NCBI RefSeq assembly: GCF_021869535.1
Contig: NW_026262745.1
Span: 58,528,001 to 58,592,000, forward strand
Direction: 5' to 3'
DNA: 64,000 nt
Origin: Mytilus californianus
Lineage: Eukaryota
Shown here piece after piece: positions 612 through 25,600 of the stretch; position 1 is the stretch's first letter; each line of letters starts with the position of its first letter. The notes beneath the pieces were generated by a model. It made no database searches, was not told the origin of the DNA, and worked only from the letters and a program-made list of their open reading frames with translations. A program made the translations under genes and the position numbers.

Positions 612-1007
612 CCAATAGGTGGAGTGAATAAATTAGGTCCAGGAGACCTTGGACCCCAGAAAAAAGAAGCAGCTCCAAAAGAAATAGGTACAAGTCATTA
701 CAAAGAGTGTTAATTTAATGTTGATTTAAGACCCATGATGGTCATGTGTGTGCTATATGTTTCCTGTCCTGAAAACCAATAGAAATTGGAATGTTTGGTG
801 AAAAATTTGAATTAAGGCTAATTGTGCTGTCATAAAAAGAATGCTGATTATGTTCTTGTTTGTCTACTCAAATGAACATAAGATATTTAGAAAATAAAAA
901 CAAACACTATTTCTTTATTACAATGTATTTATGTCCATATTTATCTTCATGTTCTTAGCTGTTGCCTCAACATATTATTAAACAATACACAATCTACAAA
1001 AGATATA

Positions 1008-1041
<34 letters not shown>

Positions 1042-4000
1042 TTGTTTTTGACCCGTCCGTCAGTCCTGTTTCTTGTCATCGCAACTCCTCTCAAACCACA
1101 TAACAGAATTTCACGAAACCTTTTAAGATAATAAGGACATACTACGTAGATGTGCATATCAACAGGAAATTACGATTCAATTCTTTTTCTAGGAGTTACG
1201 CCCCTTTGAACTTATTTACTTTAATGTACTATTGCAACAGTTTGTCATCGCAACTCCTCTCAAACCACACAACAGAATTTCATGAAACCTTTTCAGATAA
1301 TAAGGACATACTACGTAGATGTGCATATCGACAGGAAATTACGATTCAATTTTTTTTCCAGGAGTTACACCCCTTTGAACTTATTTACCCAACATACTAC
1401 TGCAACCTTTTGTCATCGCAACTCCTCTCAAATCACACAACAGAATTTCATGATACTGTGTAGATAATAAGGACATACTATGTAGATGTGCATATTGACA
1501 GGAAATTATGATTCAATTTTTTTTTCTGATACAATTTTTTTTTCTTACACTTATTTTATTTCTCCAATGACAATGTGGGGACGTGGGGTATGTGAGCGCG
1601 CTCACTAAGGTTCTTTAATTTTGTTACAAAACAATTCAAGTATGTAAAATTGTGAAAACGTCCATTTTCAGAATTACAAGTATGAGTACATCAAATAAAA
1701 CATTCAACTTTGATAAAGTATAAGGTGTGTGGGTCAGAATTAACCAGACTGAACTGAATTGTCCAAAGCATTGATAACAAATATATATTTAAACATAGAT
1801 TTACCGTTACAATTCTACCCGCTTATTTTTCGCTCATGAAAAACTCAATTTCTGAGTAGACCTTAGTCACATGATAAATGTCAAAACAAATACACGTGTT
1901 CATTATAACACTTATAAATACGTTACATTGTGAATTGATTTTAAAGAAATGACGCTTGTTCCAGCTTGTCATTATTATAGTTGATTCATTATAAAAGAGG
2001 GGCGAAAGATACCAGAGGGACTTTCAAACTCATAAATCAAAAAATAAACTGACAATGCCATGGCTTAAAAAGAAAAAGACAAACAATAGTACACAAAACA
2101 CAACATAGAAAACATCAGAGTAAGCAACACGAACCCAAACAAAAACGGGGGGTGATCTCAGGTAACAATAGTTATTTAATACTAATTTAAAATGTAAGGC
2201 CATATTATATATTTATAATTAGAGCCTTATAAAACCAACTCCAAACTTTTACTATGATAAATAACATCTGCTATATCATTTAATTTTGGGATGAATGATT
2301 TTAAACAATTTTGAACCTTTAGATATGCAAGCTAGCTATATTATGAAAAATACAAGTTTTTGTTAAGCTGCAACATACTTTTTTGTATATTTTCAGATTA
2401 AAAATCCAATTAAATGTTTTTATTTTCAATATACTAGTACAATTCTTAATAAATATGATTTGCATAATTAGGAATCCTATACTATGATTGGTTGCAAGCA
2501 TTTCTAATTTTAATTTTTTTGTCAGTGTATCCTTTCATAGACTGTGTTCACAGGACAACTTTCGTAACGAAAAAGAATGACTGTTATATTTTTTTCTGTC
2601 TATGAAGAAATAACATCAAAAATGTGGTGCACCCTGAATAACCTGCATAGCAGGTTATTTAAAAGTGTGCATCACATTTTGAGGTAATTTCGAATAGACT
2701 GAAAAAATATTACAGTCATTCCTTATAATTTAATTCTAAATTCCATTTTTAAGGAGTAAATCATGAAAAAAATGTTGATGATGTCACGGTCACATGACAG
2801 AATTATGTCTATGAGCTGATAGACAAAATACTTTCAGCCAATCAGAAGACGTGTTACATCCAAAATTAAATTATTACAGCTTGAATTCACTGCTAATGTA
2901 ATATACTAATGAAATTATATATTTCAGAGAAAACACAGAAGAAGAAAACAAAAGATATTTGGGATGATGATGAAGTAGTGGAGGGATCAGAATATGACAC
3001 ATTATATGACCCACGACCTCAGCCAGAGTAAGGAAATGGAAAATATACAATGGGAGATAACTGTTTCAAAGAGACATTATATAAATCTCCTTATCTTGTT
3101 TAAAAAAACTATTATAAAAATGTGGTAAAACATACAAAAGCTAAATTTTAATACAATTGGTTAGACTTAAAGGTCAGTATTGCCACACACATAAATCATA
3201 TGTTTCTACACTGTCTAATTTAAAGTCGACCACATAACTTAGTTTTTCCATATGAGGCCATAGTAAATCTTTACACAGGATTTCCACACTACTTTGAAAA
3301 CCTGAAAAATGCTTGGTATTTTATTTCAGTCTTTTTAAACCTAGAAATAACATTTAAAGTTGCCAAAATGGTGAAAATCCTTGAGTGATACTTGTAAATG
3401 GTCTATACATTTTTCATATATGTAGCTCCATAAGAGGGAGGGTGGCTGTTCCCCCTGACCCAGGCCCTAAATCTGCCTCTGAATATTGATGAAGGTTTTG
3501 GACAAACCATGAAATTCTTGTTGTAGTAAAGGTTAGAAAACCTGAAAAATTAAACAAAATATAAAATTTCAAAAAAGACCTGAAAATTGAAACTATTTTT
3601 AACACATTTTTTGTTTTTACTTGTACAATAAATCTTAAATCCACTACATGTACTATAAATTCAAAAATGTTAGCGTTGCTATATATTTTCATTGCAAAAA
3701 TTGTAATGGGGTAAGTTTCACAAAATAAAAACTCGCATTTAAAATTTTGATAGCATTATTTGTATGCCCCATTTCCTGAAATCACAATGATTTATTTTGC
3801 ATTTTGGTCTATTGTCCCAACATTGCAATAATAATTCTGAAATTACATTTTAGTAATTTAATTAAGGGAGATAATAATTGTATAGTTTAGTGTTAAACTA
3901 AGGGAGATAAGCATTAAAAATATAAGTAATTTAATTAAAATTAAAAACCAATTGTTCAGAGAACAATTGAAGGTCTTTCCACCAGTAAGGATCTATTTTG

Positions 4001-7000
4001 ATATGAAAATATTAAAATTTTGTTTTAAATGTCAATTTCCGCGTCAAATGACAGCTTATTGTACGCTGATTCCAAAAATATATGGTTTCTATACAAAAAG
4101 ATATAAATAAGGGAGATAATTTTTTACTTCCGGTTTAAAAGATGTTACTTCTAGTATTGTTTGATAGTTTACTTGACACTGATTCCAAAAATATATGGTT
4201 CTATATACTTTTACATTAATTTAGTACAAAAAATAACTACTTCCGGTTTACAAAAGGTCACTTCTGGTTGACTTTTTCAATGTCACATTGCTTGCAACCT
4301 AATGCAAAAAGTCCCTTGGCTTTATCATGTATACATATGAGGTAAAAGCAAAGGTCAAAATCTATAACGTTAAATTAACCTAAAGCTCAATTTCAAGGTC
4401 ATAAACCAAGGATCTCAAATCAAAAGGCTCTAGATCTTTACTTTATATTGTTAATGAGTTATATTACCATACGACTAATATTAGATATAAAAGGGGGGAA
4501 AACTCGCATCAAATGTCTACGTACCCTTTCAACTAAAATTTACGTGTTACAACATGTCGCAACTAACAATTGTGTGAAAATATTTTGTCGATATCTTATA
4601 TGATTTCTAAAAATAAGAGAAAACAAGCCAAAATCAAAATTTTGAACATGACCTTGACCTTTGACCTTGACCTCATTTTCATTTTTTGGGACCAAGGACC
4701 TCATATTATAAGATCCCAGGCCTCTATCACTTATGGTTTTCCAGTTAAAAATGCATTTCACTTATATCAAATACAAAAGGGGAAATAACTCTCATATGGA
4801 GTCTTCGTAAAGCTTCGGTCTAAATAAAACCTAACATCCTGAGGATATAACGAGCAATTTGGAAAAATAAATTTGTCACTTTCTTTTACGGTTGCAGAGG
4901 AGATCTCATAACAAGAAAAACAGTGTTTGGGGAGATAACTCTTACAAAGAAAAGTGTTCGGTTAAACAAGGTCAGTTTCAAAAGCGTATAGACTGTATGA
5001 TATCATATACCAAAAAACTAATCGACATCTTTTGAAACAAAAATACACCGCAAGAAAAAAATTAGGCGGAAGAAAAAAAAAAAATAGAATGTCAATTTAA
5101 ACTTTGACCTTGACCCCAATTTAAAGGTCATGAAACAAGGGCCTCAAATCAAAAGACCCTAGGTCTCACAGGCCTCTACAATAACTTTTTTTCCAACTTG
5201 TCCAGTAGGACAAGTACAACCCAAAACTTACTTGTCCGAATGAAATTGGAACTTGTCCAAAACAAATCTTAATAATAACCTTTTTTGCCTAATAAGTTGA
5301 TCCAAGGAACAAAATGAATTAAAACAACAGAACAGAATTTGATTTATATCTTTTGAAATACTTTTCAAAAATATGAGTCGAGAACAACTGAATCTAGTCA
5401 TGTCACAGGGCTTAGGTTCTAGTTTTCATCAATGACAAAGTCTCATCAGACTCTGCACATGAGGCACCGTCTGATAGGCCTGTCAATGTACACTCATTGG
5501 ATTTGTATCCTGGTTGTTTAAGTTGAAAAAAGATTATTCAAATGCAATCAATAAAAAAAAGAAGATGATGTATGATTGCCAATGAGACAACTCTCTGCAA
5601 GAGACCAAATGACACAGAAATTAACAACTATAGGTCACCGTATTGCAAGTATTGTTTCTTTCTACATATGATCAAATATGATTTTGTGAATTTTATGGTA
5701 AATAATTTCTTCTTTTTTATTTAAAAAATATTTTTGTTAAAAAAATTACCGGTATGGTATTTATTATAAAGCAACAGAATAAGGTAGGAAAACGAGGTAC
5801 TGATTTGTCTTGGTCCCAAATGCCTCCTGCGTTTCCAAACTGTCTATTAATCATGTCTATTAAATATGTCTCCTACGGTGCCAAACTGTCTATTAAACTT
5901 AGGAGCCGAATCGTTTCCGAGCTGGTGAAGAACTGTCTTGTAAAGTTACCTTTTCTACAAAGCGCATCCCTGATTCGGATCAGTAAAACTGGTTTCCGAA
6001 AATAGTATGCCTTTTACCTATTAAAAAGTACCTGACAAAGATCCAGTTTAAAATTATCGGTTTGCAAGTAGACATGTCAAATTAATACTTGTTTTTATCT
6101 TCTTTTCTTGTTTTTTGTTTATAATTACTTTGTTCATCAAAGTTGGATTAAATTTATTTTCTGCAGAATAATTTTACTTGTCCCGTCGGACAAGCTTGAT
6201 CTAGCTTTTACTTGTCCGACCTTTTTTCCCTCTGGTACCGGACAATCGGACAAGCGTTATTGTCGAGGCCTGTCTCAATTATATAAGATGAATGAGTTAT
6301 ATCACCATACATGTAATTTTGAATATAAAAGGGGAGAAAACTCCCATTAAATGTCTCCGTACCCTTTCAACTGAAATTAACGTGTTACGACATGTCACAA
6401 CTAACAATTCTGTAAAAAAATTTGTCGATATCTTATAAGATTTCTGAAAATTAGTGATAACAAGCCAAAATCTAAATTTTTAACATGACCTTGACCTTTG
6501 ACCTTGACCTCATTTTCATTTTTATGGACCAAGGACCTCAAATCAAAAGACCTTAGGCCTCTATCACTTATGGTTTTCCAGTTACAAATACATTTCACAT
6601 ATATCAAATACAAAAGGGGAAATAACTCTCATATGGAGTCTTCGTAAAGCTTCGGTCTAAATAAAACCTAACATCCTGAGGATATAACAAGCAATTTGGA
6701 AAAATAAATTTGTCGCTTTCTTTTACGGTTGCGGAGGAGATCTCATAACAAGAAAAACAGTGTTTGGGGAGATAACTCTTACAAAGAAAAGTGTTCGGTT
6801 AAACAGGGTCAGTTTCAAAAGCGTATAGACTGTATGATATCATATACCAAAAAACTAAGCGACATCTTTTGAAACAAAAATACACCGCAAGATAAAAATT
6901 AGGCGGAAGAAAAAAAAATAATCAGAAGAAAACCAATAGGTCTTTCCACGGAAAGGTGGAAAGACCTAATTAAGAGAAATAATTGTTGTAAATATTAGTA

Positions 7001-9115
7001 ATTTAACTAAGGGAGATAATTATTATTAAGTGCCAGTCTTTGTAAGAATCAGGCAATTTAGAAATATTTCAAAACATTGCAGAAAAAACCCACCGATCTA
7101 ACCAACCTGAAGTTATCCTCATCATAAGTTAGAAATTATAGGTCTTTCGTTTCTGCGTGTCTGGTAATTCAAGAAATTTCTAGATAAATTTTGGTTAGAA
7201 TGATAGCAAATTACGGAGTTATCTCCCCTTAATTGTTTATTTGTAGTGCATTTCAACCAAATTATATCTTGTTTTACCAGATCAGCGAAAGGAAACGAAT
7301 GTTATATTCATGTACCATCATACATTCTGAACTTATAAAATTCATGTAAAGTTGAGTGGGTTTTTGTTTGTCATGTTTTCACCACTGCCTGATTCTTAGG
7401 CAGATTGGCACTTAAGGACATTCAACAGAACATACACAGTGATTCAGGTAAAATGATTATTGTTATATTTTTTCTTTATGAAAAATGTTATTTTACAGGT
7501 ATGACATTATTTACAAACAAGCTGTGACCTCAGAAGACATGTTTCTACAGATGGGAAATAAAAATAATGCCACTGCTAGCTGTGAAGATATGGTGGTAAG
7601 TATAGGAAAAATAAGCTTGAAAATATTTAATTGCTCATTTAAAATGGTCTGGTATTTATACCGTCATATAATAGTGAGAGGAAATCTGGTTTAGGTTTGT
7701 CCATGTATCCATTTGTCCATCGGATAATACTTAGGTCACTCTTTTATCAGGAACTTAAAATAGTAGCTCCAATTTTCTCAGCTTCATTTGATCCTGCTAT
7801 AATGTGTGATTCATTTACACATCCATCAGTTATTAACTATCAGTTACTGAATGCTTGAAGCAGGTACATTATGAGTGAGCCATAGCTTACAGTTCAACTG
7901 GTTAAAATGACAGATATAGCTTACAGTTTAATTTGTTATAATGACAGATATAGTTTGTACAGTTCAACTTGTTAAATGACAGATATAGCTTACAGTTCAA
8001 CTTGTTAAAATGACAGAGAACAAAAAGCAGAAAGGACAGTTACAATTAAAACTTTTCTGATCATGCAACCTTTACAAAAGAGACTCCTTATTTTCTTGAA
8101 AATAATCATGATTCTTTAAAAAGTAATGATAAATATTATAAAATTAATGAGTTATCTCCCATAGACCAAGATTGAATTGACAATGATTGTAGAAGGAATT
8201 GGTGATTTAAAATTTTGTGTTCTTACAAAAACTATGCATTCTTTCTGGATTTGTTATATATTCATTTGATTCTACTTTCAGGTTAAAATAGAATTACCAG
8301 GTATCAAAGGCTCTGATATAGAATTAGACGTCAAATCTAAATTTTTAGATTGTAGAACACCCAAAAGGTAAATTTTGCTATTTTATTTTATTGAATGTCG
8401 CCTAATCTATTTTAATAGAAAAAAATAATATCAAATTGCACACTAGAGATTTTTAGCAATCAACAATCAATCAGTCAAATTGAACATTGTATCATAATTT
8501 GAATTCAGGTGTGAAAAAAATTATGGAAAAATTTAGCAATAGTTAAAACATGCATTTTAAATTTGTATAGCAATAATTTCTCTCACATTTTTGTCCATTA
8601 TTCATGTTGTTTAATGATTGTAATAATAAATGCACTAAAAATTTATGAATCTATATATAGAAGATACATTTTAGCTTTAATCTTGTTGTTAGGTTTCTTT
8701 TTGATGAACCTATAACCCACATCTCATTATATACATAAGAAAACATGTTTGTGGGATTTCATATGTAAATTGTGAAAAGTCGTTTTATCACATTAAAAGG
8801 TCTTGTGGCTCTGTTCTAAACATGTCTTACAATTAAAATTGATTTTAAGTTATACTGGAGTGATCTTGACAATAGAATATTTTAACGCTTTTTTTGGGGG
8901 GGGGGGGGGGGGGGGGGAAAGAGTTGTTGCACCTTAGAATGTAACATTTTAATCTCAAACTATTATCAATGTTGTTTTTTTTCCACAGTAAACTAGGACT
9001 ACATCTACCACATCCTGTTGACCACAAGGCAGGGAAAGCACAGTGGGATGCTGACAAACAAGTATTAACAGTCACATTACGGATGGTCAGAGACTATGAT
9101 GATTTTAATTTCTGA
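612..9115 (+). CDS. DNAAF6: Dynein axonemal assembly factor 6 (PIH1D3/Twister), 5'-partial, five coding exons
   Basis: Exons 612-687, 2928-3027, 7499-7595, 8282-8367, 8989-9115, all AG/GT-bounded and phase-compatible. Spliced product: PIGGVNKLGPGDLGPQKKEAAPKEIEKTQKKKTKDIWDDDEVVEGSEYDTLYDPRPQPEYDIIYKQAVTSEDMFLQMGNKNNATASCEDMVVKIELPGIKGSDIELDVKSKFLDCRTPKSKLGLHLPHPVDHKAGKAQWDADKQVLTVTLRMVRDYDDFNF*. This matches the PIH1D3 pattern IW..EE..EG.EYD...D.R..PEY.I...Q.V..ED.FL followed by a CS/PIH1 domain. The start codon lies upstream of the window. Confidence 0.93.
1009..1616 (+). mobile_element. Helentron/DINE-1-like non-autonomous element (HINE) with internal ~169-bp tandem repeat
   Basis: 5' TTATACCCCACGC..GGGTAT followed by a GTCC microsatellite. 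TGTCATCGCAACTCCTCTC recurs at 1074, 1243 and 1411. The 3' end has the inverted subterminal GTGGGGTAT, a TGAGCGCGCTCA hairpin and a T-rich end. Confidence 0.7.
1993..2165 (+). mobile_element. Abundant interspersed repeat (GGGCGAAAGATACCA family)
   Basis: The same head (AAAGAGGGGCGAAAGATACCAGAGGGAC..AAACTCATAA..AAACTGACAA(T/C)GCCATGGC) recurs at about 29785-29955 (-), 47638-47706 (+), 50893-51140 (+) and 60490-60720 (+). Confidence 0.75.
2573..2875 (+). mobile_element. Interspersed element with ~160-bp internal palindrome
   Basis: A near-identical second copy lies at 29140-29433. The first ~160 bp fold back on themselves (GAATGA..TATTTTTTCTGTCTAT..GGTGCAC..AATAACC / GGTTATT..GTGTGCA..ATAGAC..AAAAAATATT..TCATT). 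Confidence 0.7.
3971..6968 (+). mobile_element. Helentron-like element with two ~700-bp direct repeat units, interrupted by a TIR element
   Basis: AGGTCTTTCCAC at 3971 recurs at the 3' end as a 13-bp-stem hairpin TAGGTCTTTCCAC-GGAAAG-GTGGAAAGACCTA (6937-6968). The block at about 4440-5070 is repeated at high identity at about 6273-6915. Confidence 0.6.
5169..6272. mobile_element. Non-autonomous DNA transposon with TIRs and TSD, nested in the 3971-6968 element
   Basis: TIRs CAGGCCTC(T)ACAATAAC and GTTATTGT(C)GAGGCCTG, flanked by direct repeat TCTCA (5164-5168 and 6273-6277). An alternative reading is ACAGGCC ends with a 3-bp CTC TSD. Subterminal CTTGTCC/GGACAAG motifs are present. Confidence 0.75.
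7882..8017 (+). repeat. Minisatellite, ~34-bp unit x4
   Basis: ATAGCTTACAGTTCAACT(G/T)GTTAAAATGACAGAT is repeated four times within a DNAAF6 intron. Confidence 0.9.
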
Positions 9116-12966: not shown

Positions 12967-14287
12967 TGAAAAAACATTTAGTTAGTAATTTTGTTTTTAT
13001 ATATATTAGAACGTTGAAAAGTCTATGCATGTTTGACGAATATATAAGGTATAAGGTTTAATCGTCACTATATAACAACATAAACAAATATCAAATCATA
13101 TTGTTTAAAATTAATTACTTAACTAACTGTATACTAGGCATAAACAAGATACAATATGGTGTACATTATCGGAAAATTTTATATTTTTTTTTAGAGCTTT
13201 CGAAACAGGACAAAACGCGAGGTCCTCCTACTTCGTAACGAGTTCAATTTAGATTTAGATTAGAGTTAAATTTCATATTTCCGGCAATGAACATATACAT
13301 ACAATATTAGTTCAATCATGGTCAGAAAAATATCATCTTTTTGTATGAGGCTTAGAAACTGGGGAAGGGCGAGGTTTACAGAGACCTTCAACACTTTTGT
13401 GCCAAAAATTGTTTTAATGCTGCAGCTGAAAGTTGCTACAATTGTATTTATGAAATTGTAAATACAAAAACAGACCTAATTTTCCATCCTTAAACGAACC
13501 CCAGATTGTGAAGAAAAGTGTCATGACATGAAATCGACATTGCACAAAATATCTCTTCGCTACTATCTTTGATAAAGACAACAGGAAGTGTTTGAGCTGC
13601 AGTATAATTTGACTTTATCCTACAATTTACTAAAACGTATAAAGCTATTCTTGTATTCATTTTATTTTTGATGATCCCAATTGCCCAAAGTCATAATATA
13701 TACTTACTGTCCCAGGTTAGGGGAGGGTTGAGCGCTCACAAACATGTTTAACCCGCCACATTCTGTATGTGCCTGTTCCAAGTAAGGAGCATGTAGTTCA
13801 GTGGTTGTCGTTGATTCATGTCTGTCATATTTGTTTTGCGTAAACTGTTTTGTTACAAATTAGGCCGTTATCTTTCTCAATTGAATTGTTTCATATTTTT
13901 CATGTCGGGGACTTTTATAGCCGACTATACGGTGAGGGTTTTTCTCATTGTTGAAGGCCGTACGGTTACCTATAATTGCATTGCTTAAATCCACTTCATT
14001 TGAACTTTGGTAGATAGTTGTCTCATTGGCAATCATACCAAATCTCCTTGTTTTTTGTATCCATTTTATCCATGCATAGGGAAATGTTCTGGATTTAAAC
14101 GATGCTTAACAAAACAAAATCTAGATATTAACGTTGTTTATAACCAAAAATATCTTTAAAACGTGTTAGGATATATTGTCAAAAAAAATAATGGTACACA
14201 GGGAAGCAGGAAATAGAAGTATGTTTTGTTTGGCCTAATCTGAATTAAAGCACTTATCACTCAATCTGTTGATTTATTTCAGAAATC

Positions 14288-15130
14288 ATGATGAAGATTG
14301 TTCTTTTCGGTCTTTTGGCTGTCGGAGCCATGGCTCAATTTCCTGGATTAATGGGAGGATTTGGAGGTCTTCCAAGTGGTGCCATGGACATGCTTAAAAA
14401 CCTCAAACCAGACGACATAAAAAACGCCATCAAACACATGTCTCCAGAAATGAGAGACATGGCTAAAAGTATGGGAATCACCGAAGACCAGATAAAGAAA
14501 GCCGTCAACAACATGCCAGAAGATTTCGACATGTCTTCCATGGTTTCCGGTCTGTCCGATAAGATGAAAGACAACAAGGATTCAATGAAGAACATGATGA
14601 TGAAAGAAATGGACGAAATGAAAGAACAGATGAAGGAGGAATCTGTAGCAGATTTCAAAAATCAGATGGACAACTTGGGATTTGATTTGAGTCAAGGTCC
14701 TTCTGGGTTCAGAGGTCAAATTTTGCCCAAAATTACAGAAATGATGGGAGAAAATCTTAGATACGAAGGTATTGATACAAATGATCATGAAGCTCTCCGT
14801 AAAAGCGTCCATGTTGAGATCCGAATGATGATTGGTGCTAAAAGCGACGCCCCTAACGACGAAGTCAGAAGAATGCTCAAAGAAAAAATCATGGAAGAAA
14901 TGAAAGAAGAAGGAGTTGAATTCGATAAGGAAAAGGCACAGGGTGAATTCAAGAAAGCAATGATGGGACAGTTGAAAGATATGGGAATGGACGCCAAAGA
15001 CGATATTGACCCAAGCTCATTGAAAGACATGTTGAGAACCGCCATGAAATCCGGTAAATTTGGAAATTCTCAAGGTATGATGCAGCAGTTCCTCCCAATG
15101 ATGAACCTGGACATCAAAATTGATGCTTGA
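14288..15130 (+). CDS. Secreted methionine-rich, cysteine-free protein of unknown family (280 aa)
   Basis: 843-nt ORF that is clearly GC-richer than its flanks, starting at ATG in the context AAATCATGATG. Signal-peptide-like N-terminus MMKIVLFGLLAVGAMA|QF. About 39 Met by hand count, no Cys or Trp. AATAAA downstream at 15252. Confidence 0.88.
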   Translation: MMKIVLFGLLAVGAMAQFPGLMGGFGGLPSGAMDMLKNLKPDDIKNAIKHMSPEMRDMAKSMGITEDQIKKAVNNMPEDFDMSSMVSGLSDKMKDNKDSMKNMMMKEMDEMKEQMKEESVADFKNQMDNLGFDLSQGPSGFRGQILPKITEMMGENLRYEGIDTNDHEALRKSVHVEIRMMIGAKSDAPNDEVRRMLKEKIMEEMKEEGVEFDKEKAQGEFKKAMMGQLKDMGMDAKDDIDPSSLKDMLRTAMKSGKFGNSQGMMQQFLPMMNLDIKIDA

Positions 15131-15251: not shown

Positions 15252-15257
15252 AATAAA
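15252..15257 (+). terminator. Polyadenylation signal of the Met-rich gene
   Basis: AATAAA 122 nt after the stop codon. Confidence 0.5.
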
Positions 15258-16246
15258 GTTATCAAAAGACATAACTCATTATCCGTATATGCCAACTTGA
15301 TCACATTCCTGAAAATAAATCAATAGCAATCAATATTCTAAGTATATTGATTGATTGTTGGTTTCTTAGCGTCTAGCGACAAATATTTCATGCATATTCA
15401 GGACGAGAACAAATAAACAACAAATACAATAGGTAGGTCCTGTAATATAGGCCGTCCGCGATAAAGGTCGGGGAAATTTGGACTGCCACTTGAAAATAAG
15501 GGTAAATTGTATATCCCCAATATCAAACCATAGACAATTGAAAAATAACTTAAAATTGATGGATGGATGGATAAACGGGCGGGTGGTGAATGTTTAATAT
15601 TTGGGGGATAAAGTCATCCGTTATTAAATCCTAAGAAACTGACTTCACGGCATGTGTGCCGAAATGATCATCAATAACACTTGGGTAAAAACCAAACTTG
15701 TTTCAAGGTTTTGAATATAATGTTCACCACTTTAGGAAACAAACTGGGTAACTCTTGAGAATTTGTAAACATGCAATGACATTTTGGACACACAATCTAA
15801 AGATAATATTGCCTTTAAGCATGTTTATTAATGTTCCCACTGTCGAGATAATGTTGTGTACCTAGAGTAATATGATATAACCTTGGCATTTTAACATGTA
15901 ACTGAAATCCATGCTTTCAATCTGCGAATATAGCTTAAAAGTAGTACTTCCGGTTCTGTTTTTTTTTTTCTATAATATATAGGGTTTGATTATCTTCAAT
16001 ATACCAAAATATTTAAAAAAAATTTAGAATACGTGTAGTATGGTAGAAGATGTGTCAAATAGGATATAATCAATAGTTAAAAATATCTCATTAGAATTTA
16101 AAAAAAAACCTAAACATTCTATCATTCAGCTCTCTTTGGAAATATAAGATATACAAGTAAACTATATTAAGACGGAGAAATCCAAGTTTCACCAATATAA
16201 TTACTCATAGCTAGGGGTATTGTAATTGTAAAATTCAATTGTTTAA

Positions 16247-18868
16247 AGGGCATACGATACAGTTTTGATTCCACGGTGAATTTTTGACGAAAACTTGCAT
16301 ACAAGCTAATTTTCACCTATAGTTAACTCAAATATGTAAAAAAAAATATACCTTCATATGCTACTTTTAGAGATAAATTGGGTCGAAATTTAAGATATTT
16401 ACTGGAAATTTCGATTTCTTGGACATTTCTATCGTTTAGAAAGACATACCGAACTTTTTTGTTTCAGAATATAAATGCAAGCGGATTTTTGTAACAACAT
16501 TCGGAATATCTTCTCTACATAAGTGTGCTTAGAATTTGTATAACAATGCTTTGGAAATAATTCGTTTTTATGACATTTTCATAACTTTAGTAAAAACACG
16601 GCATTTTTTTCCTGTATATTTATCTAATTTAAAAAAAAAACCCATCGGTGAATTGTACGGAAGCATATTAGCGCCACACAACTTTTTTTTTTATATTTCT
16701 TCCTACGTTTGCGTTATAACGCAAACCTTTGCAAAATAACGCAAACCTTTTGAGTTATAACGCAAACATTTGCGAAATAACGCAAACCTTTGCGTTATAA
16801 CGCAAACCTTTGCGATATAACGCAAACCTTTGCGTTATAACGCAAACGTTTGCGTTATAACGCAAAACGTTTGCGTTATAACGCAAACCTTTTGCGTTAT
16901 ATAACGCAAACCTTTTGCGTTATAACGCAAACCTTTGCGAAATAACGCAAACCTTTGCGAAATAACGCAAACCTTTGCGAAATAACGCAAACCTTTGCGT
17001 TATACCGCAAACCTTTGCGAAATAACGCAAACTTTTGCGATATAACGCAAACATTTGCGAAATAACGCAAACCTTTGCGTTACAACGCAAACCTTTGCGA
17101 TATAACGCAAACATTTGTTTTATCTTATTTCTTATCTAAGATTCAAAAGAAGCAGCAGTTATTAATGGAGGAGGCTGCATATATTAAAATTTATCTTCTT
17201 TGTACTCATTGCAAAGTAAAATGCTTTACTATTTAACTAATAATGAGCAGGATAATAGATATAAGAAGATGTGGTATGAGTGCCGATGAGAAAACTCTCC
17301 ATCTAAGTCATAATTGGTAAAAGTAAACCATTGTAGGTCAAAGTACGGTCTTCAACACGAAGCATTGGCTCACACCGGACATCAAGCTATAAAGTACGTG
17401 CCCCTAAAATGATATATATGATAATACATGTACATATATTACAATGAAAATTGAGTAAATTAAAGTTATACCGAAGAAAAAAAAAACCTGCTTATATAGC
17501 TATAGCCGAATATAGATATTCTTCCAAAGTAAGCTCTCGTTTGAGGATTGTGTAAGTTGGTTAACTACCCTTTTGCAATAAATGAATAAAATAAAGATAT
17601 TTTATTAATAAAATTATGTTCTCTCCATTTAAATTGCTACCAAGTTACCACACTAGATTGAAAATTTCATGACTTTTTATCAAAGAATCTTTATCATATT
17701 CTGAGATATTAAAAAACGATTTCTTACATCAAAACTTAAAAAAAAAATTCTTTCTTAATAATTCATTTTACAACAGAAAGATCATTTTGTCTATTTGACT
17801 TGACAGTTTTACAATTGTATGACATTATTTTTGCTCTTATCTACTTAATCAAAATTTTAAAAATGTTGGCCTTTCAAATAAAATATGCCTATAATATATC
17901 TATTTTCTTGTTAAATTATATACTTCTCTGATTCCTATGCATATTTATTATAATGACTTTGCCTTGTATTTATGGTTCTTTTCCTAACTAAATCACAACA
18001 GAAATTTAATGACAAACGAACATATATATAAAACATAATGAATAATTGAAATCAAGATGTTTGCGTTATATCGCAAATGTTTGCGTTATAATTCAAATAT
18101 TTGCGTTATTTCGCAAAGGTTTGCGTTATATCGCAAAGGTTTGCGTTATAACGCAAAGGTTTGCGTTATTTCGCAAAGGTTTGCGTTATATCGCAAAGAT
18201 TGGAAGAAAATTATAAAAAAAAAATTGTGTGGCGCTAATACGTACAGAAGCGTATTAGCGCCACACGTTTTTTTTTTATATTTCTTCCTATGTTTGCGTT
18301 AAAACGCAAACCTTTGCGTTATAACGCAAACCTTTGCGAAATAACGCAAACCTTTTGCGTTATAACGCAAACCTTTGCGAAATAACGCAAACCTTTGCGT
18401 TATAACTAAATCACAACAGAAATTTAATGACAAACGAACATATATATAAAACATAATGAATAATTGAAATCAAGATGTTTGCGTTATATCGCAAATGTTT
18501 GCGTTATAATTCAAATATTTGCGTTATTTCGCAAAGGTTTGCGTTATTTCGCAAAGGTTTGCGTAATAACGCAAACATAGGAAGAAATATAAAAAAAAAA
18601 AACGTGTGGCGCTAATACGCTTCCGTAAATACGCTTCCGTAGAATTGTTCATAAAAATTGGCACAAATAATCTTCATACATAATCAAGTCAAATGTCATT
18701 TTTAAAAAGAGGGGTCCATGAACTCGTTTTCAAGTTAAATTAGAATGAATGATAAAAAAAATCGGTCGAAAAATGCATCTTATGCATCTTTTCCCGATAT
18801 GTCACAGTTTGACGTCGTAAAAAATAATATTTTACGTTAGCGACTTCATTATCTCCACTGTAACTCCC
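16247..18868. mobile_element. TTAA-flanked non-autonomous element hosting the IS3EU-like insertion
   Basis: Segments 16247-16655 and 18642-18868 join into one element homologous to an uninterrupted inverted copy at about 55500-56062. TTAA is present at both ends (16243-16246, 18869-18872), and the GGG-type termini are imperfect. Confidence 0.6.
16656..18641. mobile_element. IS3EU-like non-autonomous DNA transposon (head-to-tail dimer) with 18-bp palindromic tandem arrays
   Basis: Termini TACGGAAGC(A/G)TATTAGCGCCACAC and GTGTGGCGCTAATACGCTTCCGTA, with a 6-bp TSD GAATTG (16650-16655 and 18642-18647). Arrays of (A)TAACGCAAACCTTTGCG(AA/TT) run inward from each end. An internal right-end/left-end junction lies at about 18228-18266. 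Confidence 0.8.
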
Positions 18869-19674: not shown

Positions 19675-22600
19675 ATGAACGTCACCATGAGGTCTTTGTA
19701 TGTGTGTGCCGTGTTTTTGTCTTCTTTATCGTGCTCATTTGGAGCAACTATTTTAGAATATTTACAGAGCAAACCAGCCAATTTTACATATGCCGTCCAA
19801 GCTATTAAAATTGCAAATTTGACGAATGAACTTCAATCAGGAGGTATGGTTATAATTTATATAATTTTATGTTTTTCTTAATATTCTTTAACTTGGTACA
19901 CGTTTATCTTGATAATTAGTATGCGCTGCCTGCCTTATTAAACGAGCATTATGTTTTCTGGTCTGTGCGTCCGTCCGTCCGTTAGTCAGACGGTATTAGG
20001 TTTGAGTTTTTTTGTTTATGGTAGTTTATCATGAAGTTGTGGTCACACTTGGTACACATGTACACATGTTCATGTACACATGTTCAATTTAATGTGATTT
20101 TTTTTAATCATATATAAAAGTAAGATGCGGTATGATTGCCAATGAGACAACTCTCCACGAGAGACCAAATTACATAGAAGTTAACAACAAAAGGCCCCCG
20201 TACGGCCTTCAACAATGAGTTAAATTCATATATGCCAACTTTTGGTCTTGACCCCGCTCCCGTGGTTCACTAAACATAGAAATGTAATGATCTGAAATTC
20301 TCAGGTAAAATTTTTGGTTAAGGTAGTTTGAAACCTAGTACACGTGTTCATTGCTATGTAAACTATGTATGCCTTATAGTTGTGACCCCGACTTCACGGT
20401 TCACTGAACATGGACGTATGATAGTTCGAACAGGGCATGATGTCCAATTGACATACATTCTTGTTACAGGCTTGTAATAGCACTCGCAAACATGTTCAAC
20501 ACCTCTACAATCGTTTTGTGTCTGTCCCAAGTGAAAAGCGTGTAATTCAGTGGTTGTTGTAGGTTGCTTTCGGTCATGACTTTCCTCGTTTATTGATTTT
20601 AGCTTTACACATGTCGATGTGTTCTCTTGTTACTTTATTGTCATCCCGGCAGGTAGCTTTTACAGCTTACTTTACAGTACGGTTTTGCTCATTGCTGAAG
20701 GCCATACGATGACCTGCTATTGTTTACATTCTTGTCCTTTGGTCCTTGGTTAGTTGTCTCACTGGCAACAATACCGTATCGTCTTATTTGTATATTAAAG
20801 GTTGACTCCTATTTTATAAATGGACATCAAAGTGGCTGTTGTGCATCAAGAGATAACGCTGGTTTAGATGGCATTTAGTTTTATTACCTTGTGAATCAAG
20901 TCATCTTAGAGATAAATCTGTTTTAGAGGATATTTTGTATATAACCAATTAGTACTGCTCATTTCCATTGTATTTATACATTTTAAACCACACCACCATC
21001 TTTTATATCTCTTTTAGTCTTTTGTCGGTTTTCTTCTGGCATGACCATTCTTTGTCCTGTATAAGAGTCTGGATAGGGGTAATCATTTCTTTGTTATGGT
21101 TACCGTAGTTTTTCTCATTTCTTTATTTGATTTTGCACAATATTCTCTATTCTTAATATTTAGCACCTCCTTATTTTCTATTCTTTTTTTTTATTTGCCT
21201 ATTTTCTCTTTTTCTATATTTTTTAGCCAAATTTACTTTAGTTTTGGTTCATTATTCTCAATTCGGTAAACCCCATTCGGACCATCTTGGATATAGGGGT
21301 AGAAGATGTTTAAAGAGCAATAAAAACCATAGATAAGTTGGTGAAAATAGACAACATTGTCAAAAGAAAAAAGACTACAAGACAAACAGTTAAAAAAGCA
21401 CTACACAAAAACTACTGATTGAGCAAAAAGTAAAATAACAAAAATTAATACCGAACTCCAAGGAAAATTCAAACCGGAAAGTCCCTTATCAAATGGCAAA
21501 AACAAAAGCCCAAACCCATCAAACGTATGGAAAACAACTGTCATATTCCTGACTTGGTACGGGCATTTCCTTATGTATAAAATGGTGGATTAAACCTGGT
21601 TTTATAGCTAGCTAAACCTCCTACTTGATTGACAGTCGTATATAATTCCATTATATTGACAACAATGTGTGATCAAAACAAGCAAACCCAACCAAACACA
21701 TGGTATGCAATCAGGTTCTCCTGTTGAAGGGTAAACAGTTTCTGCTCCGTTAGTGGTACACTTCGTGTTGCTCATGGCAGGTAAAATTACGTTATTATGT
21801 TGCATTCGGTGATGTAACTATCCAGGAGAAGAGGACAGGATTGTAGTTTTGACAAATGAACCATATCCGTGTATGATAATACTAAAATTAACAAAAAAAA
21901 AAGCCTTTTCTCTTTGTTCTTCGTCTCCAACCAGGATCGTCCTGAACATGCATGAAATATTTGACACTGGAACTACCAATCCATCAATCTCCAGATAGGA
22001 AAATCAATTCATGTTTTTGAGACAGAGTTAACTAGTTAGCTTCGCGATTGTACATGTGTATTTTGTTGAAAGGTTATCCTACTAAGAACTTTGTTCTATT
22101 CTACCAATTTTCCATACAGTTTTGCAATTTTGTATAAAACTTTCTATAAAGTTACTTAAGTAATTTGTCGGCGTAAAAGGCAGCTCCTTTGCAGAAATGG
22201 CTTGCGTCTCCCCTTTTTCAGTTAGTGGCATAAAAAAACCCGATAGACCCGTATTAATGACAATGCTGTTATAAATAAGCAAAATTATGATAAAGTGTAT
22301 TTATGTCTGTTATTAAATCTAATTTGTCATGTCATGACACTGTTCAATGGTTTTCCAATTTGATTCCATTTTGCTCACAAGTAATTAAAACTATTTTGAT
22401 ATTTTGATAGATAAAATTATCAATATCATTAATTTATAAAGTTTAATCTATAATGATGTATATATTCAATGTACAGGACCATTTACGGCATTTATACCAA
22501 CTGATGCTGCCTTCCAGAAAATTCCAGCACCAATTTTACAACAACTTTTAAATGATCAAACTGCAATCAGAAGTTTGTTGCTTAAACATGTGACAAATGG

Positions 22601-25600
22601 AGCACTCATTTCACCATTCATCAAAAGCGGAGACAAAGAAGTATCCCTTGGCGGTACTAACTTAACTTTGACCAAAAATGGCGCTGGTGTAAGTAGCTAT
22701 ATGAAAGTAAAATAAATTGAAATTGAAATTATCTAGATATCATTAAGTTTTTTTTCTATGCACCCTGAGTTCAAATTCATTCCGTTTTGCTTTTCTCGTG
22801 TCAATTATTAAATTTTTTTTTATATCTAATGTGTATATAAATTAATAGAAAACATTGATTATCCCATAGTCACTGTGATACATGAATTTAGTGTTGAAAT
22901 AAACTACATTATCCATTCTGCATGTTCATTTACCAAAATTCTCGTCAGACGTTTTCTCAAATTATCACATCTTTAGGTTTGTCCTAACTGTTTAAAAAAA
23001 ATACAATTTTTCTGCAGCTAAATCGATTTAAAGCTTGATATATGCATCTATTGATTGATGCAGACCGCGTATATTTGTTTCAAGTCGATATCTGTCTAAT
23101 CAAATGAACGCAAAAACATTTAATGTGAACAGTACATTTCTTAAAATGTAAATAAAGGTGAGATGTACACATTGACAACAATATTGGCACAGTTCCCTGC
23201 ACCAAACGTTATTTTATTTGCATACATTTAACGTTGAAGTGAGTTTCATAGCATGCCATGTTCATGCTAATCAACGATTGCTTCCAATCGATTTGTATTT
23301 ACGATCTTGTTCATGACTTACGATCAATCTTAGTCGTAAGTTTTTTTTTTCTGAAACCGACTCCTGTGCTAAAGATAATCGTAATAAGATCGTTCTTAAT
23401 GACGATGGTTAACAATGCAATTTGAACAAGTTAATCGATCACGATCGGTTCAGATCACCTTAATTATATTTTGCATTTAATTGTTCATAGCTTATTACTA
23501 TATTGCCATATTGCCGTCGGTCTTAATGAGAACCATAGAATCGATCGCGATCGATTTACAACGATTCACAATCAAATTAAATCGATATTGATTGTATGGT
23601 ATAATGGTTTATATTTTAGGCTGTATCCGTGAATGGGGTAAAAGTTATCCTTCCTGACGTCATCGTATCCAATGGTGTTGTACAAGGAATTGATTTCGTC
23701 TTCAATGTGCCCGCTGCTAGCGTCAATATGGTTGAGTATCTTTTAAAAAATCAAGACCAATTCAAAGACCTCACTGCAGCATTAACACTTGGTGGTTTAC
23801 TGTCAACACTAGAGGGTTAGTTTGTGTTAATACACAAGAGCATTCAATATGTGCGCCATGTCAAACTAATGGTTTTTTTTTCTTTGCTTGCGAGCTGTTT
23901 TTTTGTTTGTTTGTAATAAGCCTAAATTCAAGATGATTGCCTTCAGATGTATCAAGCCGCATTTTGATTGTCTAAATAAAGCACCACGAAATAATGCTAG
24001 TAAGCATCTTTAGTGACGAAAATCACTTAGGGTAGGCGCCAATAAGACAGCAACCAAAACACACTGGGTAAGGAAAGGATTAGACCTAAATTGGTCCTTA
24101 AATTTCCAACGGGTGGAATAAATGATTAATTGTATTTTCCCAAGAAAACGAAGCTTTTTAAAAAATAAAATAGTTTTGCTTTGTAACTGAGCAGGTTTTA
24201 AAGGTGATAAATGGCGATGTATTCACTAAAATTGCCAAGTTACACAAAACAATTTAACCATTTCACTCAAATATGACGGGAAATAAGGTAAATGTGTACA
24301 TCACAATCCAACACAACCCACATTTCTTAAAAAAAGAAAAGAAGATATACATGCAGGAAGTGTCAAGTTGCTTTATTATCTACTCGCTTGCAAATATTCT
24401 TGTAATATTGTACTATTAGCCGCTAGACGAAAATCATTCATCAAGCAATCAATCAAAATTCTTGCAACAAGAATCACGAAAGATATTCACATACAATGAC
24501 TTAAAATTTTAAGAAATTTCATGTTCGTGTAGCACAACGCCTCTCACACATGTGTTCCAATTTCTTTTCTAACGAAATTCATACAAAAGTAACAAGAAAA
24601 ACAATGAATTTTTTATCAGATGTTAAGTGAAAATTCATGTTTAAAAATATATTTAAGGTAGTTACTGATTACTCATATAAAAAAAATCTAATCGAAAAGC
24701 CAAGTGTTTCCTTTCAATAGGATAAGAGCCCTAGTATATCTTTAAAATCGATGTTCGAAACAGTGGCAATGTCGCTTCACTAGCGTCGCATCGCAGAGAT
24801 GACGTTACTTCTTTTTGTTTGTTTGGTTCCAAACAATCGGTTAACACTAGCGGTCTTTCTTATTTGTATATATTGTACTCGGAGAATTAAGAGCTAGACT
24901 TTTGGTATGGATGTTTGTCTATCATTGACCTTGGATGCCTGTCTATCATTGACCTTGGGTGTCTATTTTGGTCTAATGTGTTATTGATTTGTGTCACATT
25001 GACAGTTTCTCCACATCTTTTCTGATTCATATGCATTTTCTGTTGTAGGTCCAGGACCTTTCACGTTGTTTGCACCAACGGACGCAGCGTTCACAACTTT
25101 GTCAACCTCACTACAAAGTCTAGCCTCAGACATGAATCTTTTTAAAAGTAAGATATTACAGACATCTTCAAATCTCTAAATGAGAAAGTCATTGTTATGG
25201 TAGATATTTTTATAAAAGTTATATTTGCAGCTTGTTTAAATAAGTACTGTATGGACTCATGCATGTCATGTGTGAATCTTTAGTCTAAAAAAGAGATAAT
25301 TCATGGAATTATTTGGCGGCATGCTCTATAAATTCATTTTTCATGTCAAAAGTAATTTCTTCATTTTTTTGAAATTTCGACGTCTGCAGTGCATGTACAT
25401 TGTACAGTTTACAGATCTACCGAAAACGTATCGTGAACACTTAAAATAATTAAGAAGCTTACTGTAACAAAATAACGTACAAAAGTTAATACTGCCGCTT
25501 ACTGTAACAAAATAACGTACAAAAGGCAATACTGCCGCTTACCGTAACAAAACAACGTACAAAAGATAGTTCTACCGCTTACAGTAACAAAATAACGTAC

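What the first reader, a model, noticed from the sequence alone, without database searches (positions are those of the whole stretch)
14288..15130. Orphan secreted Met-rich, Cys-free helical protein beside a fasciclin cluster
Seen: 280 aa with a signal peptide, about 39 Met (about 14%), many Lys/Asp/Glu, no Cys or Trp and one Tyr. A helix-cap-like motif recurs five times (MAKSMGIT, QMDNLGFD, NLRYEGID, EMKEEGVE, QLKDMGMD), and there is a G/F/P-rich N-terminal linker. I recognise no family. Inference: a secreted all-alpha repeat protein with this much Met could be an extracellular oxidant sink or redox buffer, a soft-metal (Cu/Ag) binder, a sulfur/amino-acid store, or a shell, byssus or mucus matrix component. 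Its position 4.5 kb upstream of four secreted adhesion-type genes raises possible co-regulation.
Basis: partly seen in the sequence, partly recalled or inferred. Interest (0 to 1): 0.78.

Follow-up and report, generated by a model that had tools for sequence, protein, structure and literature searches.

The report
Mussel secreted methionine-rich helical-repeat protein
This is a real mussel gene for a secreted, cysteine-free, methionine-rich helical protein; it is not an orphan but a shortened copy, stripped of its coding introns, of an unnamed gene family found across bivalves, and its function is untested.

Summary
The ORF at 14288-15130 (+) encodes 280 aa with 39 Met (13.9%), no Cys or Trp, one Tyr, a canonical signal peptide and five conserved helix-Gly-hydrophobic-Asp/Glu/Thr turns.

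"Orphan" is wrong. Profile searches find about 30 relatives, all in bivalves (mussels, oysters, pearl oysters, scallop, freshwater mussels). All are unnamed, Met-rich (6.5-14%), almost Cys-free and acidic.

The window gene belongs to a well-supported "short" clade, most likely mytilid (source species mostly unidentified). This clade lacks the C-terminal ~120 aa of the 400-500 aa long forms. It keeps the family's acceptor-like site 1-5 nt before the ATG. It has lost all ~10 shared coding introns of the long genes, which points to reverse-transcriptase-mediated loss.

dN/dS is 0.13-0.33. Transcript-like contigs occur in one seawater poly(A) library and, at minimum, in run X15 of the same species. 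One other RNA run has no reads.

AlphaFold gives 12-13 helices but no confident fold. No Pfam, PDB or Atlas match was found.

Met occupies positions that hold Leu/Ile/Val/Phe in relatives, and Met-Met spacing is random. Met therefore lines pliable hydrophobic helix faces and does not form metal motifs. The role remains unknown. Nothing links the gene to the fasciclin genes.

The parts
14288..15130 (+). Complete coding sequence (280 codons plus TGA) in one exon
   Evidence: orthologues keep the frame and stop position; dN/dS 0.13-0.33
14288..14335 (+). Signal peptide, residues 1-16 (MMK, hydrophobic core, AMA before Gln17)
   Evidence: read from the sequence; conserved in all full-length family members, short and long; no SignalP run
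14336..14386 (+). G/F/P/M-rich linker, residues 17-33; expanded to MG and PPMMM runs in the long Mytilus paralogues
   Evidence: AlphaFold pLDDT about 30
14393..14533 (+). N-terminal module, residues 36-82: four short helices around the motif PxMxDMxxxMGI(T/S)EDQ. This is the most conserved part of the whole family
   Evidence: invariant M55, M58, M62, G63 and P77; many fragment hits of the profile fall here; pLDDT 66-69
14609..15043 (+). Four helical repeat units (residues about 108-252), each ending in a Gly-hydrophobic-Asp/Glu turn (G131, G161, G209, G233)
   Evidence: hhalign between units 87-96% probability, z 9-16 against column shuffles; each unit corresponds to about one exon in the long paralogues
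15053..15127 (+). Met/Gln-rich tail ending NLDIKIDA; matches the NLE(I/V)N(V/I)D motif after which the long forms continue for about 120 aa
14268..14282 (+). Splice-acceptor-like site (pyrimidine tract plus CAG) 5 nt before the ATG. The first, non-coding exon was not found
   Evidence: the same feature lies 1-5 nt before the ATG in seven short-form loci and in three long-form genes; the M. galloprovincialis model splices into it. Inferred, not shown by reads
15252..15257 (+). First AATAAA after the stop codon (a second is at 15314-15319); candidate poly(A) signal
   Evidence: read; no read evidence
13656..14207 (.). High-copy repeat just upstream, probably inside the 5' intron or promoter region; not part of the gene product
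   Evidence: very high depth at 90-95% likeness in all mussel runs
15312..15495 (.). High-copy repeat just downstream of the gene

Best explanation
Identity. The window holds an independent, expressed gene. Its whole coding sequence lies in one exon, behind a probable 5'-UTR intron. The product is a mature protein of about 30 kDa, acidic (pI about 5), Cys-free and secreted. After the signal peptide come a short Gly/Phe/Met linker, a conserved four-helix N-terminal module and four helix-turn repeats.

Origin. It is the short-clade member of a bivalve-wide, unnamed family of secreted Met-rich helical-repeat proteins. The short form arose from a multi-exon long-form gene. It lost all coding introns at once, which implies reverse transcription: either a retrocopy of a transcript that still carried the first intron, or conversion by a cDNA. 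It also lost the C-terminal Met/Pro/Gln-rich segment and the terminal helices.

Mechanism (inferred, not shown). Met, Leu, Ile and Phe form the hydrophobic stripe of amphipathic helices. With no disulfides and no confidently predicted tertiary fold, the chain is a flexible helical protein. It would act through reversible hydrophobic association, with itself or with a partner, as an extracellular scaffold or carrier. It is not an enzyme and not a dedicated metal site. High Met would make these faces unusually pliable and sensitive to oxidation. Expression is restricted by stage or tissue, and a planktonic stage is possible.
For: - Real gene: intact ORF with conserved frame and stop in at least 8 relatives; dN/dS 0.13-0.33.
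- Family: profile search of 1.84 billion representatives gives 30 hits, 14 at E<=1e-10. The named ones are Mytilus californianus, M. coruscus and M. trossulus, Crassostrea, Ostrea, Saccostrea, Pinctada, Argopecten, Potamilus and Sinanodonta, all 'uncharacterized'. The whole family is Met-rich (6.5-14%), acidic, with 0-3 Cys.
- Short clade monophyletic, 100/100 support.
- Intron loss: long genes have 10-16 exons, with intron positions shared between Mytilus, Ostrea and Potamilus at window-equivalent residues about 28, 62, 106, 136, 165, 186, 215, 238, 260 and 267. None is present in the window ORF or in the genomic loci L003 and L004.
- An acceptor-like site just before the ATG is shared by short and long genes.
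- Independence from the upstream gene: that gene's own last exon and stop lie at about 8990-9115.
- Structure: 12-13 helices, pLDDT 47-54, pTM 0.27.
- Hydrophobic i+4 periodicity, z 3-4.
- Columns holding Met in the window protein hold M/L/I/V/F/A in 81% of homologue cells.
- Internal repeats.
- Expression: a 688-nt contig at 99.6% identity in a seawater oligo-dT RNA library. In run X15 of the same species the contigs cover only the coding region, not the unique flanks. Another RNA run of the species has no reads there.
Against: - The mechanism is inferred from composition and periodicity only.
- Helix-by-helix hydrophobic moments are modest (z 0-2.6), and the longest helices show low moments at 100 degrees.
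- Low AlphaFold confidence may reflect the shallow alignment (11 and 30 sequences) and not real flexibility.
- The 5' exon, transcription start and poly(A) site were not seen.
- No contig of either run covers the last 18 codons. Contigs of two runs stop at 15073/15074, at a donor-like AAG|GTATGA, so an alternative 3' end is not excluded.
- The run type of X15-X19 is not on record, and only X15 was laid.
- The species of most short-form relatives are unknown, so 'mytilid-specific' rests on similarity.
- No poly(A) remnant or target-site duplication was found that would prove retroposition.
Confidence: 0.6

Rival explanations
1. Structural matrix component of shell, hinge ligament, larval shell, byssus or mucus. 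The Met-rich helices aggregate or cross-link into an insoluble scaffold, as proposed for the Met-rich proteins of pearl-oyster shell and ligament.
For: Met-rich regions are common in the insoluble shell and ligament proteins of Pinctada (LMP, NU-5; PMC7591529; PMC13080008). The long paralogues carry short MG and PPMMM blocks like those proteins. The family is bivalve-restricted. The protein is acidic.
Against: The known Met-rich matrix proteins are low-complexity repeats (LMP: PDMMMK units). This protein is a conserved, non-repetitive-looking helical sequence under purifying selection, with only 14% Met. No member was found under a name in the shell-proteome papers read.
Confidence: 0.2
2. Exchangeable-apolipoprotein-like carrier. 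Tandem amphipathic helices form a loose bundle in water and open onto lipid or another hydrophobic cargo in haemolymph or in larvae.
For: The overall anatomy matches apoA-I-type proteins (comparison from general knowledge): secreted, about 30 kDa, pI about 5, Cys-free, tandem helices broken by Gly/Pro turns, no confident fold. Hydrophobic i+4 periodicity is present. One orthologue (P0004) has a weak hit to Pfam Apolipoprotein PF01442 (E 3.3e-5, 24 bits).
Against: The 24 bits are far below the curated cut-off of 90, and only 3 of 30 members hit at all. Helix moments are modest. GRAVY is -0.74. There is no 11/22-residue periodicity test in its favour.
Confidence: 0.15
3. Sacrificial oxidant sink or methionine (sulfur amino-acid) reserve. 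Abundant exposed Met is oxidised and re-reduced, or simply stored for a later life stage.
For: Met content of 14% is about six times typical and is kept high across the family. The mussel short and long forms have the highest values, 11-14%.
Against: Met sits mostly at conserved hydrophobic positions that swap with Leu/Ile/Phe, which is not expected of a bulk reserve. The sequence is under purifying selection along its whole length. No extracellular Met-sulfoxide reductase link was examined.
Confidence: 0.1
4. Soft-metal (Cu(I)/Ag(I)) binder using Met thioethers.
For: High Met content; the N-terminal module has four nearly invariant Met within 12 residues (M51, M55, M58, M62).
Against: Met-Met spacings at 1-8 residues do not differ from shuffles (z at most 1.8 in the window protein). 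The protein has only three His and no Cys. Most Met columns are replaced by aliphatic residues in relatives.
Confidence: 0.04
5. The ORF is the last exon of the upstream gene, as in the 436-aa M. galloprovincialis model P0002.
For: P0002 joins four upstream exons (window 612-8377) to the acceptor before the ATG.
Against: The upstream gene's own terminal exon with a stop lies at about 8990-9115. The joined part starts with a conserved signal peptide, which would be internal in the fusion. All other relatives, including RefSeq models, begin at this Met.
Confidence: 0.03

Closest known systems
Unnamed bivalve family of secreted Met-rich helical-repeat proteins (e.g. M. californianus LOC127712740, M. 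trossulus LOC134728072, C. virginica LOC111099090/091, O. edulis LOC125664898/899, Pinctada A0A194AMK7)
   Same: Signal peptide, Gly/Met linker, N-terminal PxMxDMMxxMGI module, Gly-hydrophobic-Asp helical repeats, NL(D/E)I motif, Met-rich, acidic, almost Cys-free, acceptor-like site just before the ATG.
   Different: The window protein stops after the NLDI motif and lacks about 120 C-terminal residues. Its coding sequence has no introns, against 10-16 exons in the long genes. It lies on another chromosome-sized contig than the long paralogue of the same species.
Met-rich shell and ligament matrix proteins of pearl oysters (LMP, NU-5, MRNP34)
   Same: Secreted bivalve proteins with unusual Met content. 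Short Met/Pro and Met/Gly blocks in the long paralogues recall LMP.
   Different: Those are low-complexity repeat proteins (LMP: tens of PDMMMK units). No sequence similarity was detected by the profile search. Here Met is spread through conserved helices.
Exchangeable apolipoproteins (apoA-I/A-IV/E, Pfam PF01442)
   Same: Secreted, about 30 kDa, acidic, Cys-poor, tandem amphipathic helices broken by Gly/Pro, no rigid predicted fold.
   Different: No significant homology: best hit 24 bits against a cut-off of 90, in one orthologue. Different repeat length. Lipid binding untested.
Met-lined helical binding surfaces (SRP54 M domain, calmodulin lobes); comparison from general knowledge, not tested
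   Same: Met supplies flexible hydrophobic faces on helices and interchanges with Leu/Ile.
   Different: Those are intracellular and have defined folds. No sequence or structure match was obtained here.
WIYLD / UBA-like three-helix modules
   Same: A 24-column match of the MGI(S/T)ED..K.A.KN hairpin to plant WIYLD repeats (hhalign 86%, score 31 against 8.7 +/- 2.4 for shuffles).
   Different: The match is only a helix-turn-helix stretch. Pfam WIYLD hits in family members are at E >= 0.11. An extracellular setting makes ubiquitin binding implausible.

Membership tests
Bivalve unnamed secreted Met-rich helical-repeat family | Significant full-length profile similarity | tested here: met
   P0012 E 1.1e-27. 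Profile hits P0013 2e-89, P0014 1e-36, P0015 6e-35, P0017 6e-26, P0019 6e-23.
Bivalve unnamed secreted Met-rich helical-repeat family | Signal peptide, Gly/Met linker and conserved N-terminal module | tested here: met
   Alignments A1, A3 and A4. P53, M58, G63 and P77 are at least 90% conserved.
Bivalve unnamed secreted Met-rich helical-repeat family | Tandem helix / Gly-hydrophobic-Asp repeats | tested here: met
   G161 and G209 invariant in 30 sequences. Unit-to-unit hhalign 87-96%.
Bivalve unnamed secreted Met-rich helical-repeat family | C-terminal Met/Pro/Gln-rich segment plus conserved terminal helices | tested here: not met
   Absent from the ORF. No remnant in the window by tblastn. 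The gene is therefore filed as a truncated sub-clade.
Bivalve unnamed secreted Met-rich helical-repeat family | Multi-exon coding region with shared intron positions | tested here: not met
   10-16 exons in L006, L007 and L008 against a single coding exon here.
RT-mediated intron-less gene copy (retrogene or cDNA conversion) | Loss of all parental coding introns at once | tested here: met
   About 10 shared parental intron positions fall inside the homologous region and none is present.
RT-mediated intron-less gene copy (retrogene or cDNA conversion) | Poly(A) remnant and target-site duplication; loss of the 5'-UTR intron | tested here: not met
   No A-tract or duplication is evident. The acceptor-like site before the ATG is retained as in the parents. 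A plain retrocopy of mature mRNA is therefore not the simplest path.
RT-mediated intron-less gene copy (retrogene or cDNA conversion) | Copy kept functional | tested here: met
   dN/dS 0.13-0.33 and intact ORFs in all short-form loci.
LMP-type Met-rich matrix proteins | Long low-complexity Met repeats (e.g. PDMMMK) | tested here: not met
   No such repeats in the ORF. LMP sequence seen in the supplement of PMC7591529.
LMP-type Met-rich matrix proteins | Presence in the insoluble shell or ligament fraction | not testable with these tools
   Needs proteomics.
Exchangeable apolipoproteins (PF01442) | Pfam gathering score | tested here: not met
   Window protein: no hit. Best family member 24.1 bits against a cut-off of 90.
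Met-motif Cu(I)/Ag(I) binders | Enriched and conserved MxM / MxxM / MxxxM motifs | tested here: not met
   Spacing z from -1.0 to 1.8 in the window protein. Met columns hold aliphatic residues in relatives.
Abductin-type elastomers | Protein dominated by Gly/Met/Phe short repeats | tested here: not met
   Only residues 17-33 have that composition. The comparison with abductin is from memory.
WIYLD / UBA-like domain | Domain-length profile match | tested here: inconclusive
   24 columns at 86% probability. Pfam E >= 0.11.

The most novel reading that the evidence does not exclude
The bivalve-wide family, including this short form, is a new class of extracellular protein in which Met-lined helical repeats serve as an oxidation-switchable or unusually compliant hydrophobic glue. 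It could, for example, be a soluble organiser of Met-rich elastic or mineralising matrices (hinge ligament, larval shell). The mussel short form would be a retro-derived, stage-specific variant that lost the anchoring tail.
Probability: 0.12. Interest if true: 0.75.

Novelty: new variant of a known kind. Interest (0 to 1): 0.45.

Why it matters
Bivalves use methionine-rich proteins in shell and ligament in ways that are poorly understood. This family shows a second, non-low-complexity way of building a Met-rich secreted protein. It is conserved from freshwater mussels to oysters, yet has no name, no domain entry and no fold. The window gene adds a clean evolutionary case: a duplicate that lost about ten coding introns and its C-terminal domain, kept the 5'-UTR splice site, and stayed under selection. 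It also corrects a fused gene model in M. galloprovincialis. If a function is found (scaffold, carrier or redox role), it will apply to a family present in commercially important oysters, mussels and pearl oysters.

Tried and rejected
- Pfam on the window protein and on all 30 family members gave only sub-threshold, scattered hits.
- The PDB sequence profile search returned only designed helical repeat proteins, at E 0.0015 or worse.
- Two AlphaFold runs gave low confidence. Foldseek against PDB and the Atlas shape search gave no match. The models are too weak for a negative to mean much.
- The ESM Atlas feature search returned nothing for the window protein and for P0013, and an error for P0015.
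- hhalign self-comparison of the whole alignment listed no off-diagonal hit. Unit-against-unit comparison with shuffle controls did find repeats.
- Literature: no paper holds the LOC or UniProt identifiers or the run accessions. A ~50-kDa Met-rich ligament protein of Pinctada, checked as a candidate relative, is an unrelated Asn/Gly-rich protein.
- The C-terminal domain of the long form found no further relatives.
- Synteny: tblastn of FAS1 and upstream-gene exons against the flanks of a related locus found nothing.
- The upstream gene could not be named by Pfam or PDB. I recall a resemblance to a PIH1D3-type CS domain, but that is from memory only.
- I first took the 1.1-1.4 kb Logan contigs for transcripts. 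I dropped that because all of them carry the acceptor-like site and upstream non-coding sequence.

Full report
**Observation**

The ORF at 14288-15130 (+) is real and matches the description.
- It encodes 280 residues with 39 Met (13.9%), 32 Lys, 27 Asp and 22 Glu. It has no Cys or Trp and one Tyr.
- The five quoted motifs start at residues 58, 126, 156, 204 and 228.
- In a window of about 32% G+C, only a single-exon rhodopsin-type receptor has a longer ORF.
- The N-terminus has the n/h/c layout of a signal peptide: MMK, a 13-residue hydrophobic core, then AMA before Gln17. This layout is conserved in all relatives. No signal-peptide predictor was available.
- The mature chain is about 29.9 kDa, with pI about 5.0 and GRAVY -0.74.

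**Not an orphan**

- The word search found a 90%-identical M. galloprovincialis model, nine proteins at 51-62% identity, and a 35%-identical M. trossulus protein of 422 aa.
- A profile of these, run against 1.84 billion cluster representatives, returned 30 hits, 14 at E<=1e-10.
- The named hits come from M. californianus, M. coruscus, Crassostrea virginica, Ostrea edulis, Saccostrea, Pinctada, Argopecten, Potamilus and Sinanodonta. They are often tandem pairs or triplets, and all are 'uncharacterized' or 'hypothetical'.
- Nothing outside bivalves was identified. The exceptions are two weak multi-repeat hits. One is a plant protein made of 12 WIYLD domains. It shares only a 24-column helix-turn-helix stretch with the N-terminal module.
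- The whole family is Met-rich (6.5-14%), acidic and almost free of Cys and Trp.
- No Pfam family reaches its threshold in any member.

**Place in the family**

- Long forms have 394-510 aa. After the part shared with the window protein, which ends at an NLE(I/V)N(V/I)D-like motif, they continue with a Met/Pro/Gln-rich stretch and conserved terminal helices.
- The window protein and its 278-366 aa relatives stop just after that motif. They form one clade with 100/100 support. The branching of this clade, the Mytilus long forms and the oyster/pearl-oyster/scallop forms is unresolved.
- Some short-form relatives have expanded a 27-residue C-terminal repeat.

**Gene structure and origin**

- The long genes are highly split: at least 13 exon pieces in M. 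californianus over 12 kb, 10 in O. edulis and 15 in Potamilus.
- Their intron positions coincide in alignment coordinates. The window-equivalent residues are about 28, 62, 106, 136, 165, 186, 215, 238, 260 and 267. Roughly one helical unit corresponds to one exon.
- None of these introns exists in the window ORF or in related genomic loci such as L003 and L004.
- All seven short-form loci and three long genes carry a pyrimidine tract plus YAG 1-5 nt before the ATG. This points to an ancestral 5'-UTR intron that the short form kept.
- Losing all coding introns while keeping the first one implies a reverse-transcribed intermediate. That could be a retrocopy of a transcript still holding intron 1, or conversion of a duplicate by cDNA. 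It is not a plain retrocopy of mature mRNA.
- The short and long paralogues of the species lie on different chromosome-sized contigs, 99.9 and 115.5 Mb.
- dN/dS against four related loci is 0.13-0.33, apart from one nearly identical pair. The copy is therefore functional.

**Independence from the neighbours**

- The M. galloprovincialis model adds 157 N-terminal residues. Their exons lie at 612-704, 2927-3028, 7500-7604 and 8282-8377 in the window.
- That upstream gene has its own terminal exon and stop at about 8990-9115. The fusion is therefore an annotation artefact or, at most, a read-through.
- FAS1-type exons start 4.5 kb downstream and lie on both strands up to 50 kb.
- No FAS1 match lies near a related short-form locus, and none is recorded beside the long paralogue. 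Co-regulation was not tested with reads.

**Expression**

- A seawater oligo-dT RNA library holds a 688-nt contig (14387-15074) at 99.6% identity.
- Five small runs of the same species hold about half of the sampled words. In the one that was laid (X15), contigs cover only 14301-15073 and none of the unique flanks. This fits RNA, but the library type is not on record.
- A 2026 RNA run of the species, with about 10 million reads sampled, has no read on the gene. Expression is therefore restricted by tissue or stage.
- Family members also appear in a marine eukaryote transcript catalogue and in JGI environmental assemblies. Together with the seawater library this hints at planktonic stages. It is a hint only.
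- Contigs of both runs stop at 15073/15074, where the sequence reads AAG|GTATGA. Nothing covers the last 18 codons or the 3' UTR.
- The tail is conserved in orthologues. A polymorphism that breaks the assembly graph is therefore as likely as an alternative splice. I could not resolve this.

**Structure and mechanism**

- AlphaFold with 11 and with 30 sequences predicts 12-13 helices but no confident packing. Mean pLDDT is 47 and 54, and pTM is 0.27. The best regions are residues 40-80 and 160-200.
- Foldseek against PDB, the Atlas shape search and a PDB profile search give nothing usable.
- Units around G131, G161, G209 and G233 match each other at 87-96% hhalign probability (z 9-16 against column shuffles). 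The N-terminal unit matches more weakly.
- Taken together, Met, Leu, Ile, Val and Phe show strong i+4 enrichment and i+1, i+2 and i+6 depletion (z about 3-4). Met-Met spacings are no different from shuffles.
- Columns where the window protein has Met hold Met in 34% of homologue cells, and Leu, Ile, Val, Phe or Ala in a further 47%.
- Met is therefore mainly a hydrophobic-face residue. The mussel clades have pushed its share upward.
- The most economical reading is a flexible, disulfide-free helical-repeat protein that works by reversible hydrophobic association, as an extracellular scaffold or carrier. This step is inference.
- The data weaken a dedicated Cu/Ag site. They do not decide between a matrix role, a lipid or hydrophobic-cargo role, and a redox or reserve role.

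**Comparison with known proteins**

- The Met-rich bivalve proteins in the literature are low-complexity (LMP with PDMMMK repeats, NU-5, MRNP34). They show no similarity to this family.
- The same genome has a separately noted candidate LMP-like locus elsewhere (untested).
- Exchangeable apolipoproteins resemble this protein in anatomy but not in sequence: 24 bits against a cut-off of 90, in one orthologue.

**Verdict**

- 'Orphan' and the fasciclin link are not supported.
- The protein is a new, truncated variant, free of coding introns, of an undescribed bivalve family.
- Interest is moderate. The family and its origin are clear, but the function remains open.

Noticed in passing
window 612-704, 2927-3028, 7500-7604, 8282-8377, about 8990-9115 (+): Exons of an unrelated upstream gene. 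The last one ends ...LTVTLRMVRDYDDFNF plus a stop. The M. galloprovincialis 436-aa model skips this last exon and fuses the gene to the Met-rich ORF. Pfam and PDB do not name the gene; a resemblance to a PIH1D3-type CS domain is from memory only.
   Followed up: partly
window 15073-15075: Contigs from two independent runs (X1 and X15) end at the same place inside the ORF, at a donor-like AAG|GTATGA. Neither run covers the last 18 codons or the 3' UTR. This is either a polymorphism or an alternative splice; unresolved.
   Followed up: partly
window 19675-19881 (+), 23629-23820 (+), 35124-35324 (-), 38208-38387 (-), 43614-43823 (-), 46442-46783 (-), 47156-47401 (-), 49848-50063 (-): Fasciclin-type exons on both strands, three of them with signal-peptide-like starts. 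Only 47159-47401 was confirmed by Pfam (PF02469, E 1.2e-9).
   Followed up: partly
window 52791-53870 (-): Single-exon 359-aa rhodopsin-family receptor (Pfam 7tm_1, E 1e-18).
   Followed up: partly
window 13656-14207, 15312-15495, 17152-17500: High-copy repeats flanking the gene, with very high depth at 90-95% likeness in all mussel runs. They are probably transposable elements; not classified.
   Followed up: no
L006 27345-31980 (M. californianus, GCA_021869535.1 JAKFGE010000008.1): A second multi-exon family member (406-aa product) lies 5 kb downstream of the long paralogue. Oysters and Sinanodonta also have tandem copies.
   Followed up: partly
P0008-P0011; L004 10700-11110: Short-form relatives carry two to four tandem copies of a 27-residue C-terminal unit (MKDMMKSVKKSGQFGHPDRMAQQFAAP-like). 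In L004 the repeat runs on past the called stop.
   Followed up: no
long-form genes L006, L007, L008: Exon boundaries fall close to the Gly-hydrophobic-Asp turns, so about one exon equals one helical unit. This suggests the repeats arose by exon duplication.
   Followed up: partly
window residues 58-81 of the protein (14459-14530): The hairpin MAKSMGITEDQIKKAVNNMPEDFD aligns to helices of plant WIYLD domains (hhalign 86% over 24 columns). This is probably convergence on a simple helix-turn-helix.
   Followed up: partly
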